DNA from: Ostrea edulis
Taxonomy: Eukaryota
DNA: 64,000 nucleotides
Direction: 5' to 3'
Assembly (NCBI RefSeq): GCF_947568905.1
Contig: NC_079167.1
Coordinates: 80,662,001 to 80,726,000, forward strand
Part shown: positions 19,110-24,706 of the stretch, piece after piece
Layout of the letters: the number at the start of each line of letters is the position of its first letter
How positions within the stretch are numbered: position 1 is the stretch's first letter
Translations under genes and position numbers: made by a program
The notes under the pieces: model-generated
Database searches by the model: none
Seen by the model: only the letters and a program-made list of their open reading frames with translations
What the model was told of the DNA's origin: nothing

Positions 19110-19796
19110 GTTTACATTTCGAGCACGGCATGGGTTGTGTGGCTCGATTTATTCGTTGAATTGGATAGTGAGTTGAACAATAAAATCATTGAAACATGAG
19201 AGACCGTCAGTTATTGGAAATGTGTTGAATTTCTATTAAGGTTTTCTATCAATTATCTTTTTCAATGATTAATTTACACAAGCCGTTCATTCACTACCGG
19301 TATTTAAACTGTAAATGCAAAATCTGAAAACACTGATTTAAGATATATCTTAGGAAAAGAGATTTCTTATGAACGTTTCGTGAAACAGTTGTGGATATTC
19401 TTAGGAAATTCGTAAGTTAGAACTTAAGAATATCTTACGACATATCTTAAGATATATCTTAGGAAAGTTTTATGAAACTGGGCCCAGGAACTTCCAGGGG
19501 CTTACCCCCCCCCCCCCCCACCACCACCACCACCAGGGCTTCGCCCTAGACCCACTGGGGGCCTCAGGCCGGCCCCAAACCTGCCTCATAAAGTGGTGCC
19601 CCCCGTAACAGCAATTCCTGCATCCGTCCATGCATTTCCTCTTCGACCCCCCCCCCTTTGAAAAATTTCTAGATCCGCCCCTGAACCCTGTCAATGCAGT
19701 CCATGCTACAAGGTTATGTGAATTTTTACTTGAATGTTTTGAATTGCGCAATAAAAATAGAGTGCTATAATTATATTACTAATGCCACATGCAATA

Positions 19797-19894
19797 CATC
19801 ATCAAAAACCCACGGTTGGTTGCGCTTCGTTCTTCTCTCCATTTTGTGATGGAGAGACGAACGAAGCGTAATCAACCGTGGGTTTCTGACGATG
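19797..19894. repeat. ~98-bp imperfect palindrome (hairpin MITE-like)
   Basis: AAACCCACGGTTGGTTGCGCTTCGTTC..CTCTCCAT / ATGGAGAG..GAACGAAGCGTAATCAACCGTGGGTTT. Confidence 0.85.
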
Positions 19895-19989
19895 CATGCT
19901 ATACTAAATTTGCATACATATGTCACATGTTCATTAAAAATATATATACACGTTTATGAATTGTTAGAACTTAGTTTATTATATATTTC

Positions 19990-20809
19990 ACTTTGACAAA
20001 TTAAAAAGTGTGTTAAGTTACTGGTACAGACTTGAAAATCTTGGTCAGTCGTTTCCACTATTGTTTGATGCATATCGAGAATCAAAATTACTTTTTGAAC
20101 AAAACAATTCATCATGGTTTGGTTCTATAAACTGTTTCATAACCAATATTAATGGGGTTAAAGATTTGCCCTTTAAAGGAGCATACCAGTTTTAAAAGGC
20201 TCTTGGCCTTCACACCTTACATTAAATTCAGATTTAAAAAAAAAACGAAGTTGCTTTTCTACTTTTAAACAAAATTTTGGTTTTGAAAATTATTTGAGAT
20301 CAATTAAAAATTTTGAGCAAAGGAGAAGTCTAACACGTTTCCGTATATCAGCTCATAGACTAAACATTGAAAGGGGACGTTACCAGAAAATCCCTCGACA
20401 CGACGAAAAACATTTTTTATTCTCATGTAGTCATTTATCAGAAGAAAGGGTTATTTTATTCCAAATGATAGACAAATCATGTAAGAATTTTGTAAAGATG
20501 GACAGTGATCAAAAGCTTATCTGGCTAATGACCAATGAAGATGAAAATATCCTCATCCAAATTAGTAAGATGATTTTAAACAGTGGGATATAATACTACA
20601 AATGTTACATTTCATTGCATTATGCACATTTTCTTTCTTCATCGTATTTTACACTTGTAGGCTGTCTTGGCTACTGGGAGTCTGGTACAACAATTTATTA
20701 CCAGACTGTTAACAGGCACTGTCCCTTGGTGCTCCCTGTAAACAGGTCAACATATTGTGTTTTGTTTGTGTGTTTGTTTTTTTATTCTCTCATATAACGC
20801 TATTATTCT
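19990..20809 (+). repeat. Left copy of an 820-bp direct repeat (itself an old LINE 3' remnant)
   Basis: Matches 22990-23808 except at three sites; encodes decayed RRSLTRFRISAHRLNIERGRYQKIPRH..EKHFLFSCS. Confidence 0.95.
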
Positions 20810-22989
20810 TAAAACTACGAAAAGCACCTGGAGATGACTTGTTGACAAATGAACACATAATACATGGTGGTAAACTACTTATCTCCTGTCTTCTAAAGTT
20901 ATTTAACGCAATTGTAAATTGTGGTCATGTCTCCGTCTACTGGAAACGCGGTCTGATAGTTCCGTTATATAAGGGTGGCAATAAACCTAAAGATTCCTGT
21001 AACAGTTACAGACCTGTAGCCTTATTGCCTTGCTTTTTTAAGCTTTTTGAAAAAGTTATCTACAATCGTATTACTAAGTATGTTTTACACAAGAAAGATT
21101 TTCCCAACACTCAACAGCAAGGGTTCCAGAAAGAATTAGGTTGTCTGACTGCATCGTTCAATTTACATGAAACAATTTTTCATAATTTGGAACACGGTAG
21201 TAATGTTTACGTGGGGTTTCTTGATATTAGCAAAGCGTTTGACACGGTATGGAGGCCTGGTCTTATGTTTAAAATATACGAACTTGGCATCAGGGGTAAA
21301 TTATGGTCACTTATTAACCAATGTCACCAAAATACAGTGAGTTCAATTATTGTAAACCAAACCCAATCAGATTGGTTTCCTCTTAACCAAGGTGTTAGAC
21401 AGGGCGGTATGCTTTCTACCTTTTTGTACCTTGTTTTTATTAATGATCTTATTCATGAATTACAGTCGGGTAGTCTAAATACTGGCGTACTAGATATCCC
21501 TAGCAGCTGCCCCTCTTTAGCTGACGACTTGTCATTAATTGGCATATCACCACTATCGCTCCAAACAATGTTGGATATCGCTTACAACTACTCCAGTAAA
21601 TGGCGATTTACATTCAATGCGTCCAAATCCTGCGTCTTGCAATTTCGAGCTAAAGGAACAAAGTTAGGCAAATTATCGTGGCACTTAGGTCCTTCCAAAG
21701 TAACATGCGAACAGTCCTATAACCATCTAGGAATTGTTATTAACCACAAAAGCAAACTCTCGGACAGAATACAGGAATCTTGCAACAAAGGGCGTAAATC
21801 TTACTTCGCACTATCCGATCTTGGTACACAGTTTCTTAGCCCAATGACAATGTCTCATTTGTACAAATCGATCGTACTACCATCAGTGCTTTATGGATGT
21901 GAACTCTGGAGCAACATGTCATCTGTTGATAAAGTTCGACTTAACACATTCCAACACTTTATTTGCAAAAACTCCCTTCATTTACCAAAGTTATGCAGGT
22001 CAGATATGTGCGAATCACTTTTCAATGTTGTACCCATATGTGCTGAAATTGACGTGCGGAAACTTTTATTCTTTGGAAGATTATGTCGTCTGAATCCAAA
22101 AACATTAACGAAGTCAATATTTCTCGCAAGACTATTTTCCTATCTGTACAGTCTCTCCGATGTTCATTCTGGTTTTATTCCCGATATTGTGAAGACTCTT
22201 CAATCATATGATCTTGTTTCCCATTTATGGAAATTTCTGGAGGATGGATCCTTCCCTTCGAAGCTGAACTGGAAGAATATGGTACGTGGTAGAGTCATGA
22301 CCTCGCATCTATCTCAGCGTCAAATACGAATGTTGCACGACCGTGAATTTCTTTCCTTTATACAAATTTTCTCGGACTCAAAACCGTCGTCTATCTGGTT
22401 TTTAGCAAAAAACTACAAGGAAATTGAACTCTGCAAATTCATATGCAAACTGTGCACCAATTCGTGCTCAATGGACCAATTCCAAAATTGCTCTCTTTGT
22501 GGAAGGTCTTTCTCTAATGTGTTTCAACATTCCTCTTGCGCATGTCCTGCAACTGCAATTATTAGGAACAATTGGTGGAACATGATCACAAACTTTTTTG
22601 ACATACGCCTATGTGCAGAATTATGCGGATTGACAGAAAATGAAATGTTTCTTGTTCTTCTGGGGCGGTATACAATACACGAAACCAATAATCAAACCTT
22701 CCGCATACTGAACTTCAATTTTGTTCGAAGCGCAGCTGCGCATTACCAGAGAGCTCTGGCTCAGTTACAGGTATCGCCTCCCTAGCTGTCAGACACCATG
22801 CCGTTATCTGCCCCCTATCCATCACATACTTTAAGGGTAGTGTATATATGTTTATTCTTCTATATTCTTTTTGTTTGTATATATATATATATATGTCTGT
22901 TCAAAATGTAATATTCATATATATGTAATTGTATATTAACTTAATATTGCAATATCTCCACATGGAGGAAATAAAGAATGAATGAATGA
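20810..22989 (+). mobile_element. Young 5'-truncated CR1/L2-group LINE with (GAAT)n tail
   Basis: Uninterrupted RT ORF, 3' UTR ending GAGGAAATAAAGAATGAATGAATGA; endonuclease domain absent. Confidence 0.9.
20812..22785 (+). CDS. LINE ORF2 fragment: reverse transcriptase plus C-terminal CCHC domain (no own start codon)
   Basis: KAPGDD, PLYKG..YRPVALL, QQGF, FLDISKAFDTV, GVRQGGMLSTFLY, LADD, CSLC..HSSCAC. The ORF-track start at 20755 lies in the flanking repeat. Confidence 0.9.
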   Translation, partial: KLRKAPGDDLLTNEHIIHGGKLLISCLLKLFNAIVNCGHVSVYWKRGLIVPLYKGGNKPKDSCNSYRPVALLPCFFKLFEKVIYNRITKYVLHKKDFPNTQQQGFQKELGCLTASFNLHETIFHNLEHGSNVYVGFLDISKAFDTVWRPGLMFKIYELGIRGKLWSLINQCHQNTVSSIIVNQTQSDWFPLNQGVRQGGMLSTFLYLVFINDLIHELQSGSLNTGVLDIPSSCPSLADDLSLIGISPLSLQTMLDIAYNYSSKWRFTFNASKSCVLQFRAKGTKLGKLSWHLGPSKVTCEQSYNHLGIVINHKSKLSDRIQESCNKGRKSYFALSDLGTQFLSPMTMSHLYKSIVLPSVLYGCELWSNMSSVDKVRLNTFQHFICKNSLHLPKLCRSDMCESLFNVVPICAEIDVRKLLFFGRLCRLNPKTLTKSIFLARLFSYLYSLSDVHSGFIPDIVKTLQSYDLVSHLWKFLEDGSFPSKLNWKNMVRGRVMTSHLSQRQIRMLHDREFLSFIQIFSDSKPSSIWFLAKNYKEIELCKFICKLCTNSCSMDQFQNCSLCGRSFSNVFQHSSCACPATAIIRNNWWNMITNFFDIRLCAELCGLTENEMFLVLLGRYTIHETNNQTFRILNFNFVRSAAAHYQRALAQLQVSPP

Positions 22990-23808
22990 ACTTTGACAAA
23001 TTAAAAAGTGTGTTAAGTTACTGGTACAGACTTGAAAATCTTGGTCAGTCGTTTCCACTATTGTTTGATGCATATCGAGAATCAAAATTACTTTTTGAAC
23101 AAAACAATTCATCATGGTTTGGTTCTATAAACTGTTTCATAACCAATATTAATGGGGTTAAAGATTTGCCCTTTAAAGGAGCATACCAGTTTTAAAAGGC
23201 TCTTGGCCTTCACACCTTACATTAAATTCAGATAAAAAAAAAAAAACGAAGTTGCTTTTCTACTTTTAAACAAAATTTTGGTTTTGAAAATTATTTGAGA
23301 TCAATTAAAAATTTTGAGCAAAGGAGAAGTCTAACACGTTTCCGTATATCAGCTCATAGACTAAACATTGAAAGGGGACGTTACCAGAAAATCCCTCGAC
23401 ACGACGAAAAACATTTTTTATTCTCATGTAGTCATTTATCAGAAGAAAGGGTTATTTTATTCCAAATGATGGACAAATCATGTAAGAATTTTGTAAAGAT
23501 GGACAGTGATCAAAAGCTTATCTGGCTAATGACCAATGAAGATGAAAATATCCTCATCCAAATTAGTAAGATGATTTTAAACAGTGGGATATAATACTAC
23601 AAATGTTACATTTCATTGCATTATGCACATTTTCTTTCTTCATCGTATTTTACACTTGTAGGCTGTCTTGGCTACTGGGAGTCTGGTACAACAATTTATT
23701 ACCAGACTGTTAACAGGCAGTCCCTTGGTGCTCCCTGTAAACAGGTCAACATATTGTGTTTTGTTTGTGTGTTTGTTTTTTTATTCTCTCATATAACGCT
23801 ATTATTCT
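22990..23808 (+). repeat. Right copy of the ~820-bp direct repeat
   Basis: Starts exactly 3000 bp after the left copy (ACTTTGACAAATTAAAAAGTG..TATAACGCTATTATTCT). Confidence 0.95.
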
Positions 23809-24230
23809 CTTTTATATAAGTATATTCTAACCTTCCTGCTTTAGACATAAAACATTCAGAATAACTGGATCCTGCGTGTACAAATGTAATATACTTGCAT
23901 GCTGTATTCAGTAAGATGATTTTGAACAGTGGAATGTGATACTACAAGTACATGTCTTTGCTTTGTACACATTTCCTTTACTTTACAATAGTAAGCTGTC
24001 TTGGTTACTGGGAGTACAAGACCAACAGTCTGGTACAATAAATTTTAACAGGCACTGTCCCTTGGTGGCCCCTGTAATCAAGTCAATAATTCATACTTTC
24101 TTTAACACTTCGTACAATTGTTTTCATTTATATAATTATTCTATTATCTCCCTGCATTAGCATAAAACATTCAGAACAACTGGATCCTACACGTACATGT
24201 GTTTTATACTTGCATACTCTTCTTACTGAA
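23570..24230 (+). repeat. Older diverged tandem duplication (~320-345-bp unit) of LINE 3'-UTR sequence
   Basis: GATTTT(A/G)AACAGTGG.., GCTGTCTTGG(C/T)TACTGGGAGT.., AACAGGCACTGTCCCTTGGTG and CATAAAACATTCAGAA(T/C)AACTGGATCCT each occur twice. Confidence 0.7.
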
Positions 24231-24254
24231 ATATAATTATACCGATTTGATTAC

Positions 24255-24260
<6 letters not shown>

Positions 24261-24313
<53 letters not shown>

Positions 24314-24320
24314 TATATAT
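24261..24320. repeat. (AT)n microsatellite
   Basis: ~30 AT units with one interruption. Confidence 0.95.
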
Positions 24321-24706
24321 AGTTTATTCACCAATCAAGGGCCCTGGGGGGGGGGGGTGTACATGTTAACAGGCAATTAATCATAACAATGAAAATAAAT
24401 AACAATCATTTAGAAGTATGTATATATATGTATTCACACAACACTATCATTATCTGCTGTCCCACAAACTGATGTGTGAAGCAGTTGGGTTATTTTATTT
24501 ATCATGTTGTTAATTTAAATCTTGTCTGTAATCAGTATTTCATATATAATTATAGATATGTGCAGTGCAGAAGTGTGAACTCTGTCAGTATTACCGGTAG
24601 TACTTCTAAATGATTGTTATTTATTTTCATTGTTATAATTAATTGCCTGTTAACATGTACATGCCCCCCCCCCCCCCGAGGGCCCTTGATTGGTGAATAA
24701 ACTATA
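24318..24706. repeat. ~100-bp inverted repeat (24318-24418 / 24601-24706) around a ~180-bp spacer
   Basis: TATAGTTTATTCACCAATCAAGGGCCC(G)n..TAGAAGTA versus TACTTCTA..(C)nGAGGGCCCTTGATTGGTGAATAAACTATA. Confidence 0.9.

What the first reader, a model, noticed from the sequence alone, without database searches (positions are those of the whole stretch)
19990..23808. Young LINE flanked by ~820-bp near-identical direct repeats: a giant target-site duplication?
The structure is X-LINE-X. X copies (19990-20809, 22990-23808) differ at only three sites (an A-run edge, one A/G, one 2-bp indel) and abut the 5' truncation point and the (GAAT)n tail exactly, as a TSD would. CR1/L2-group elements normally leave short or no TSDs; very long TSDs are known mainly as rare outcomes in engineered L1 assays. 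It implies second-strand nicking ~820 bp away, duplicates host DNA, and yields an LTR-like composite that could recombine out the LINE. An assembly artefact is a real alternative.
Basis: partly seen in the sequence, partly recalled or inferred. Interest (0 to 1): 0.75.

Follow-up and report, generated by a model that had tools for sequence, protein, structure and literature searches.

The report
Oyster LINE with giant target duplications
A young jumping gene (a LINE) in an oyster genome copied 820 bases of its landing site when it inserted, and about a third of its sister copies did the same on a scale of 85 to over 1,500 bases, so this family looks like a regular natural maker of small segmental duplications.

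Summary
X1 (19990-20809) and X2 (22990-23808) match at 815 of 820 aligned positions. They abut the 5' truncation point and the (GAAT)n tail of a young LINE, called B here (20810-22989).

The giant target-site duplication (TSD) reading is supported:
- Both X|B junctions are unique in the 895-Mb assembly, so this is not a mobile composite.
- The 5' junction has 2-nt microhomology.
- The pattern recurs at unrelated loci with different duplicated DNA. Of 19 B copies I could evaluate, 7 carry flanking duplications of about 85, 172, 176, 525, 820, 1,451 and at least 1,498 bp. The other 12 have 0-10 bp.
- Both B copies whose 5' ends lie beyond the fetched DNA and that I tested have kb-scale duplications.

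It is the first 820 bp of an older, decayed, 5'-truncated LINE (A, 22990-24706). B's first nick fell within 3 bp of A's old 5' junction, which I cannot explain.

B encodes an APE endonuclease and a reverse transcriptase only. Long TSDs are already known for L1 in cultured cells and tumours, once for zebrafish ZfL2-2, and routinely for Chlamydomonas Dualen-4b. This is therefore a new variant of a known kind.

Read data did not settle the assembly question. Two unchecked notes of this scan report similar LINE-flanking repeats elsewhere in this genome.

The parts
19990..20809 (+). X1, the upstream copy of the 820-bp target-site duplication (equals nt 1-820 of the resident old LINE A)
   Evidence: 815 of 820 aligned positions identical to X2. 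It ends exactly at B's first base. A Logan contig covering 19868-20019 is identical in two runs from different studies, which supports the L|X1 junction.
20808..20809 (+). 2-nt microhomology (ct) at the 5' junction between X1 and B
   Evidence: Longer B copies read '...gacacct|TAAAACTACG'. Homology to other B copies starts at 20808.
20810..22989 (+). LINE B, 5'-truncated (2,180 of about 5,612 bp): the RT and C-terminal part of ORF2 (in frame 20812-22785), the 3' UTR and the tail
   Evidence: RVT_1 at E 2.7e-25. It is 96-99% identical to at least 12 other copies and carries 11 private substitutions. The long copy L032 shows APE+RT in a 1,157-aa frame that is open at its 5' end.
22976..22989 (+). 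(GAAT)3GA tail of B, abutting X2
   Evidence: all B copies with a 3' end finish in AAAGAATGAATGAA-type repeats of variable length.
22990..23808 (+). X2, the downstream copy of the duplication, contiguous with the rest of LINE A
   Evidence: It carries two derived changes (G at 23471 and the CT deletion) relative to the A-family consensus.
22990..24706 (+). Resident old LINE A remnant, which was the insertion target. It holds the ORF2 C-terminus, a 3' UTR with units of about 315-345 bp, and a 3' end '...gaataaactata'. It was 5'-truncated at 19987-19990 before the duplication.
   Evidence: It differs from the family consensus by 3.0% substitutions and four large indels, all shared by X1 and X2.
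19987..19989 (+). 'ttc': A-family homology runs 3 nt further left than the duplicated block, so B's first nick lay 3-4 nt inside A's old 5' junction
   Evidence: the consensus is '...cccccttc|ACTTTGAC' and the window has '...atatatttc|ACTTTGAC'; hits begin at query position 288, which is window 19987.
24318..24418 (-). Nested, inverted about 101-nt copy of the A-type 3' end inside an expanded (TA)n run. It is not part of the duplication but interrupts A.
   Evidence: inverted repeats I1 and I5, 96-98% complementary to 24601-24706. Searches show that other A copies are contiguous across this point.

Best explanation
X-B-X is the product of one target-primed reverse transcription event. LINE B's endonuclease nicked the bottom strand at 19989/19990 (plus or minus 1 nt), at the left edge of an old LINE A remnant. 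B RNA was reverse-transcribed from its (GAAT)n tail for 2,180 nt. The top strand was broken, or its free 3' end became available, 820 nt downstream at 20809/20810. That 3' end paired with the cDNA through 2 nt (ct) and primed second-strand synthesis. Fill-in of both single-stranded stretches duplicated the 820 nt. The structure, the junctions and the recurrence in the family are shown. The position of the nicks follows from the TPRT model. How a break 820 nt away arises is inferred: it could be a distant host nick, a replication intermediate or break-induced copying. The event is not a freak. In this family insertions fall into two classes: 0-10 bp (12 copies) and about 85 to at least 1,498 bp (7 copies). 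This suggests a frequent alternative route for second-strand processing.
For: The near-identity and exact edges are. The X|B and B-tail|X junctions are each found only in the window in the 895-Mb assembly. The window's B is truncated relative to longer copies, with 2-nt microhomology (and the loose ends at 20808). X1 and X2 share all 24 substitutions and 4 large indels that set this A copy apart from its family, so the duplication copied resident, already decayed DNA. B is young: 99% identical to 5 copies, with 11 private substitutions in 2,180 nt. Family recurrence, with different duplicated DNA each time: L044 about 172 bp and L057 about 176 bp; L034 about 525 bp; L033 1,451 bp at about 100% identity, starting right at the tail and implying a 5,612-bp B; L035 at least 1,498 bp at about 100% identity, 8,688 bp apart, with a single B between the copies; L052 about 85 bp. 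Three of the four long-TSD 5' junctions that could be read have 2-3 nt of microhomology. In one run an X-specific contig has k-mer depth 171.5 against 98.7 and 102.4 for the unique left flank, about 1.7-fold. Precedents: PMC2666801, PMC9977147, PMC5223499, bioRxiv 10.1101/2024.12.14.628481.
Against: No single read or contig spanning both X copies was obtained. The raw-read runs were sampled at only about 1.5x, and repeats swamped the table. B's first nick falls within 3-4 nt of LINE A's own old 5' junction, which a plain TSD model leaves as coincidence. X1 and X2 differ at only 3 sites, whereas B's 0.5% private divergence would predict about 8 differences (Poisson probability of 4 or fewer is about 0.09). 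This needs part of B's private changes to predate insertion, or gene conversion between the X copies.
Confidence: 0.85

Rival explanations
1. Assembly artefact: a falsely duplicated X, for example from two haplotypes or from gap closing, with B placed between the copies.
For: The three X1/X2 differences (0.4%) are within the range of allelic differences in oysters (general knowledge). No spanning read was seen. At B's private sites nearly all the short-read data examined show other B copies' letters (2 reads at 20932 keep the window's base), so this particular B copy is not independently confirmed.
Against: An artefact would have to invent the X(820)|B junction, which has the 2-nt microhomology typical of real 5'-truncated LINE junctions. 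There are no N gaps. The same architecture appears at six other loci on five chromosomes, each with different duplicated DNA and each duplication starting at or within about 30 nt of B's 3' end. X-specific k-mer depth is about 1.7 times that of the unique flank.
Confidence: 0.05
2. Two separate DNA events: either an 820-bp tandem duplication X-X existed first and B later inserted exactly at its joint, or B inserted next to A and a later rearrangement or gene conversion created X1.
For: Such a history gives the same final sequence. It could account for the low X1/X2 divergence relative to B's private divergence.
Against: It requires B to hit the 1-nt joint of a tandem duplicate. The same coincidence would have to recur at six other B loci. 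No other long two-copy direct repeat is present in the 64-kb window.
Confidence: 0.04
3. RNA-level chimera: the reverse transcriptase switched templates (A RNA, then B RNA, then A RNA), so that both X copies are fresh cDNA copies of an A transcript whose 5' end is at position 1. This would explain why X starts where A starts.
For: It explains the coincidence of X's left edge with A's 5' end. Template jumping by LINE reverse transcriptases is established (general knowledge).
Against: Both X copies carry 24 substitutions and 4 large indels found in no other A copy among the scored hits, the best of which are 84-87% identical including gaps. There is therefore no source gene. Other A copies are truncated at scattered points rather than at position 1. 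The second switch would have to enter A RNA internally at nt 820. In the sister loci the long duplications are non-A DNA, in two cases at least partly non-repetitive (first 86 nt of L035's, first about 640 nt of L033's).
Confidence: 0.03
4. Mobile composite: X-B-X or B-X moves as a unit, like an LTR-like non-LTR element or a 3' transduction.
For: None found.
Against: Both junctions occur only once in the assembly. The repeats flanking B differ at every locus.
Confidence: 0.01

Closest known systems
Long TSDs of the L2-clade LINE ZfL2-2 in chicken DT40 cells (Suzuki et al. 2009, PMC2666801)
   Same: An APE-type LINE with a short-repeat tail. Most insertions have target alterations of 20 bp or less, and one of 25 wild-type insertions had a 1,228-bp TSD. 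[quoted passage not shown]
   Different: That was an engineered assay in a foreign host with a frequency of 4%. Here the insertions are natural germline events and 7 of 19 evaluated copies are long. Whether B belongs to the L2 clade was not tested.
Dualen-4b_cRei in Chlamydomonas mutation-accumulation lines (PMC9977147)
   Same: A LINE family for which long flanking duplications are habitual: more than half of insertions exceed 50 bp, with a median of 900 bp. The size range is the same as here.
   Different: Dualen carries both APE and restriction-like endonucleases, and the authors suggest that this pair causes the long TSDs. B shows only APE and RT in Pfam, so that explanation cannot apply. 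Dualen is from an alga and B from an animal.
Large TSDs of human L1 in cultured cells and tumours (PMC5223499; bioRxiv 10.1101/2024.12.14.628481)
   Same: TSDs over 100 bp occur in fewer than 10% of HeLa events and in the majority of events in NER-deficient cells. In cancers, 1-10-kb tandem duplications with an L1 at the joint are regarded as large TSDs. The proposed causes are a distant second nick, replication or repair ends, or break-induced replication.
   Different: Those events are somatic or engineered, and the element has a poly(A) tail. Here the copies sit in a germline assembly, the tail is a short repeat, and the long class is more frequent.
R9 rDNA-specific LINE of bdelloid rotifers (Gladyshev and Arkhipova 2009, as cited in PMC9977147)
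   Same: A natural LINE with an exceptionally long TSD.
   Different: R9 makes a fixed 126-bp TSD at one specific target. B makes variable TSDs of 85 to over 1,498 bp at many targets, as well as short ones.

Membership tests
Non-LTR retrotransposon (LINE) inserted by target-primed reverse transcription | Encodes a reverse transcriptase, and an APE-type endonuclease in full-length copies | tested here: met
   RVT_1 at E 2.7e-25 in the window copy. Exo_endo_phos at E 4.6e-10 and RVT_1 in the long copy L032.
Non-LTR retrotransposon (LINE) inserted by target-primed reverse transcription | Copies share a common 3' end and tail and have variable 5' truncation points | tested here: met
   the (GAAT)n tail is present in all copies with a 3' end, and 5' ends are scattered from ref 152 to 2783.
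Non-LTR retrotransposon (LINE) inserted by target-primed reverse transcription | Flanking direct repeat is made of target DNA that differs from locus to locus | tested here: met
   the duplicated sequence is different at each of 7 loci.
Long (over 20 bp) target-site duplication | The duplication starts at the element's 3' tail and ends at its 5' end with no extra DNA | tested here: met
   Window: exact to within 1-2 nt. L034 and L057 are exact. L044 has 11 nt of filler after the tail, and in the old copy L052 the downstream repeat starts about 15-30 nt after B's 3' end. For L033 and L035 only the tail-side edge could be read.
Long (over 20 bp) target-site duplication | An empty site with a single copy of the duplicated segment exists in the population or in a relative | not testable with these tools
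   The empty allele L-X-R has no diagnostic junction. The short reads were sampled at about 1.5x. No related genome is in the collection.
Long (over 20 bp) target-site duplication | Both copies and the insert lie on one DNA molecule | tested here: inconclusive
   No spanning record appears. Support is indirect: depth ratio of about 1.7 and recurrence at other loci.
   No reference RT set was available. The protein-atlas neighbours are unnamed mollusc APE+RT clusters. The short-repeat tail is compatible with the group but does not define it.
Dualen clade | Has a restriction-like endonuclease in addition to APE | tested here: not met
   Pfam finds only Exo_endo_phos and RVT_1 in the 1,157-aa ORF2. 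Only about 80 residues follow the Cys/His motif.

The most novel reading that the evidence does not exclude
LINE B represents a class of APE-only animal LINEs in which about one third of germline insertions finish by a second pathway that duplicates 0.1 to more than 1.5 kb of target DNA. Among the long cases the duplication length grows with the length of cDNA made (Spearman rho 0.81, n=7, one value estimated). This would point to a time-dependent process, such as progressive unwinding, replication-fork encounter or break-induced copying, rather than a second endonuclease cut. Such a family would be a steady, sequence-independent source of small segmental duplications in bivalve genomes.
Probability: 0.35. 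Interest if true: 0.7.

Novelty: new variant of a known kind. Interest (0 to 1): 0.5.

Why it matters
Long TSDs have mostly been seen in engineered assays, repair-deficient cells and tumours. The one natural family known to make them habitually (Dualen) was explained by its two endonucleases. A young APE-only LINE family in an animal germline that leaves duplications of 85 to over 1,498 bp at 7 of 19 evaluated copies shows two things. The long-TSD route can be a normal, heritable outcome, and it does not need a second endonuclease.

It also offers a natural data set: young copies whose duplications are still about 100% identical. These can be used to ask what sets the position of the second break. 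The family could duplicate exons or regulatory DNA without any homology requirement. For annotation, such X-LINE-X units mimic LTR-like structures and collapsed or duplicated haplotypes, and they should not be 'corrected' away.

Tried and rejected
- **Read laying.** Only about 6% of each raw run was read, about 1.5x. Cross-mapping from other A and B copies dominated, and no table shows reads across 20809/20810 or 22989/22990. The result is inconclusive, apart from the L|X1 contig and the depth ratio.
- **More genome DNA.** The 5' edges at L033 and L035, and the flanks of L032, L036, L039, L045 and L050, stay unread.
- **Mis-oriented searches.** Three own-genome searches were sent in the stored orientation of minus-strand loci. 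They hit B's own 5' part and give no TSD information.
- **Mobile composite.** Rejected.
- **A transcript starting at position 1.** Rejected: other A copies continue upstream or are truncated elsewhere.
- **A's own TSD.** I looked for it to fix the L|A junction and found none convincing.
- **A-family control for long TSDs.** 0 of 6 evaluable 5'-truncated copies. This is too few to show that the habit is specific to B (my own estimate, 7/19 against 0/6, is about p 0.1).
- **Clade of B.** Pfam and the protein atlas gave no clade. The big protein search was not used.
- **Target motif.** No clear motif appears at the first or second break sites.
- **Other similar units in the window.** None: the repeat finder over the whole window finds no other long two-copy repeat.
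Full report
**Observation**

The window holds two near-identical direct repeats, X1 (19990-20809) and X2 (22990-23808), spaced 3,000 to 3,001 nt apart. A global alignment gives 815 identical positions out of 820 and three sites of difference:
- TT against AAA at 20233-20235, at the edge of an A-run.
- A against G at 20470/23471.
- A CT deletion in X2 opposite 20719-20720.

X1 ends at the first base of the middle element, and X2 begins straight after that element's (GAAT)3GA tail.

**What the pieces are**

The middle element, B (20810-22989), is the 3' 2,180 nt of a LINE.
- Its reading frame (20812-22785) holds a reverse transcriptase (RVT_1, E 2.7e-25).
- At least 12 other copies in the same 895-Mb assembly are 94-99% identical.
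- Longer copies continue upstream with '...gacacct|TAAAACTACG'. The window copy is therefore 5'-truncated, and 2 nt (ct) at the junction are shared with X1. Clipped reads at 20808 show the same upstream B sequence.
- A long copy (L032) carries a 1,157-aa frame, open at its 5' end, with an APE-type endonuclease and the RT and nothing else that Pfam recognises.
- The window's B has 11 private substitutions in 2,180 nt. The five youngest copies have 0-3.

X is not ordinary host DNA. X2 runs on without a break into about 900 further nt of an older LINE, A (22990-24706). The A remnant consists of:
- the C-terminal end of an ORF2;
- a 3' UTR with tandem units of about 315-345 nt;
- a 3' end '...gaataaactata';
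- an interruption at 24275-24418 by an expanded (TA)n run and a short inverted A-type 3' fragment.

Other A copies continue upstream of X's first base ('...gggaagattcccccttc|ACTTTGAC'), so the window's A was 5'-truncated at 19987-19990.

Against the A consensus, X has 24 substitutions in 795 aligned nt (3.0%) and four large indels. X1 and X2 share every one of them. The duplication therefore copied a resident, already decayed A remnant and is much younger than A.

**Tests of the giant-TSD reading**

1. Mobile composite. The X|B junction and the B-tail|X junction each occur once in the assembly, in the window. This reading is rejected.
2. Ordinary TSDs of the family. Twelve B copies with both junctions readable have 0-10 bp, for example 'gaggatg' at L049.
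3. Long TSDs elsewhere in the family. Six other B copies at unrelated loci are flanked by long direct repeats of locus-specific DNA. Four of these repeats begin at the tail; at L044 and L052 11 to about 30 unmatched nt come first.

| Locus | B insert | Flanking repeat | Identity |
|---|---|---|---|
| L044 (C4:5.81 Mb) | 1.55 kb | about 172 bp | 97% |
| L057 (C4:32.5 Mb) | 0.9 kb | about 176 bp | 96.6% |
| L034 (C10:32.5 Mb) | 3.53 kb | about 525 bp; upstream copy ends at B's 5' junction | 97% |
| L033 (C6:29.3 Mb) | 5,612 bp (implied) | 1,451 bp | about 100% |
| L035 (C9:16.5 Mb) | unknown; single B between the copies | at least 1,498 bp, 8,688 bp apart | about 100% |
| L052 (old copy) | 1.85 kb | about 85 bp | diverged |

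Counting the window, 7 of 19 evaluable copies carry duplications of about 85 bp or more. Both tested copies whose 5' ends lie beyond the fetched DNA have kb-scale ones. Three of the four long-TSD 5' junctions that could be read have 2-3 nt of microhomology, as expected for annealing of a target 3' end to the cDNA.

The sizes fall into two classes, 0-10 bp and 85 bp or more. Among the long class, duplication length rises with insert length (Spearman rho 0.81, p 0.03, n=7). That figure uses an estimated 3,076 bp for L035, so it is only suggestive.

**Assembly artefact**

The read data do not settle this. Only about 6% of each raw run was read, and other A and B copies swamp the tables. Two things can be taken from them:
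- A 152-nt contig covering 19868-20019 is identical in two runs from different studies. This supports the L|X1 junction.
- In one run an X-specific contig (20150-20305, spanning this A copy's private deletion) has depth 171.5, against 98.7 and 102.4 for the unique left flank. The ratio of about 1.7 is what two X copies would give.

The stronger argument is structural. An artefact would have to invent a 5' junction with microhomology at a LINE truncation point, and do so at seven loci on five chromosomes. I put the artefact at about 5%.

**Mechanism**

The sequence shows a 5'-truncated B whose tail abuts the left edge of the duplicated segment and whose 5' end abuts the right edge.

From the TPRT model it follows that the first, bottom-strand nick was at 19989/19990 and that the top-strand 3' end used for second-strand synthesis was at 20809.

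How a top-strand end arises 820 nt (or 0.1 to over 1.5 kb) away is inference. The literature offers three routes:
- a distant second nick or a repair or replication end (PMC5223499);
[quoted passage not shown] The two size classes and the possible scaling with insert length fit a separate, time-dependent host route better than a sloppy endonuclease. This is not shown.

**Unexplained**

- B's first nick lies 3-4 nt inside A's old 5' junction. The flank there is TA-rich ('ttattatatatttc'), and A-type elements end in or next to TA-rich runs. Re-use of a favoured nick site is therefore possible, but it may be chance.
- The RNA template-switch alternative would explain this coincidence. It fails because no source A copy with this copy's private mutations was found among the scored hits.
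- X1 and X2 differ less (3 sites) than B's 0.5% private divergence predicts (about 8 sites). Either part of B's private changes came from its source, or the X copies have exchanged sequence.

**Comparison with what is known**

Long TSDs are a known outcome for LINEs:
- Fewer than 10% of L1 events in HeLa cells exceed 100 bp, and most do in NER-deficient cells (PMC5223499).
- In tumours, 1-10-kb tandem duplications with an L1 at the joint are regarded as large TSDs (bioRxiv 10.1101/2024.12.14.628481).
- One of 25 ZfL2-2 insertions in DT40 cells had a 1,228-bp TSD (PMC2666801).
- R9 makes a fixed 126-bp TSD.
- Dualen-4b of Chlamydomonas makes a median of 900 bp, ascribed there to its two endonucleases (PMC9977147).
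- Typical TSD length depends on the element species: 15 bp for L1 and 5 bp for ZfL2-1 (PMC4245944).

The window's case is thus a member of a known kind. What is new is a young animal LINE family with APE only in which the long class makes up about a third of surviving germline copies and exceeds 1.5 kb. B is not a Dualen: no restriction-like endonuclease was found. Its CR1/L2 membership was not tested.

**Other notes of this scan**

Two unchecked first-reader notes on other DNA of the same genome describe similar structures:
- a LINE flanked by direct repeats of about 3.48 kb (s1-306973);
- a LINE fragment with an 82-bp perfect direct repeat (s1-287687).

I could not test whether they belong to family B. 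They are leads, not support.

**Verdict**

Two corrections apply: the duplicated DNA is an old LINE remnant, and the event is one instance of a family habit. Novelty: new variant of a known kind. Interest: 0.5.

Noticed in passing
L033 (G000:C6:29314627-29323140) and L035 (G000:C9:16480060-16490245): Two very young B copies (L033's implied length 5,612 bp; L035's unknown) are flanked by direct repeats that are about 100% identical: 1,451 bp at L033 and at least 1,498 bp at L035. These are larger than the window's 820 bp. At L035 the repeats are 8,688 bp apart, so the duplication would be about 3.1 kb if B is 5.6 kb long.
   Followed up: partly
window 19987-19990: B's insertion point coincides to within 3-4 nt with the 5' truncation junction of the older LINE A. 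This is unexplained. It may reflect re-use of a TA-rich nick site, or it may be chance.
   Followed up: partly
B copies at L057, L044, L052, window, L034, L033, L035: Among the long-TSD copies, duplication length rises with insert length (0.9 kb/176 bp up to 5.6 kb/1,451 bp and more; rho 0.81, n=7). Two duplications (172 and 176 bp) are about the size of a nucleosome or an Okazaki fragment.
   Followed up: partly
window 24275-24418 and 24601-24706: An expanded (TA)n run holds an inverted copy, about 101 nt long, of the A-type 3' end. Together with A's own 3' end it forms a 96-98% complementary inverted repeat around A's last 182 nt. It looks like a MITE but is a nested, extremely 5'-truncated insertion.
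   Followed up: partly
window 19794-19897: A 49-nt-arm hairpin (88% complementary, 6-nt loop) belongs to a very high-copy repeat. Read depth there is 10-100 times that of neighbouring bins, and hundreds of reads are clipped at 19846 and 19894.
   Followed up: no
window 23565-24218, and other A copies: LINE A's 3' UTR is built of 2-3 diverged tandem units of about 315-345 nt. The number of units varies between copies. Reads show a frequent joint from 24040 back to 20692, which reflects extra units in other copies.
   Followed up: no
L053/L058 (G000:C4:13233396-13241192): The flank of one B fragment here is the reverse complement of the flank of the neighbouring fragment. This looks like a 5' inversion of the twin-priming type in this family.
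   Followed up: no
L057 (G000:C4:32.548 Mb), upstream flank: The target site carries 'aatgaatgaag' 4 nt before the first nick, which resembles B's own (GAAT)n tail. This hints that the RNA tail anneals to the target during priming.
   Followed up: no
window 20233-20236: A contig from the best-holding run reads 'agatTA' plus an A-run here. This is intermediate between X1 (TT) and X2 (AA), so this difference between the copies may be a homopolymer-edge polymorphism or an assembly uncertainty.
   Followed up: no
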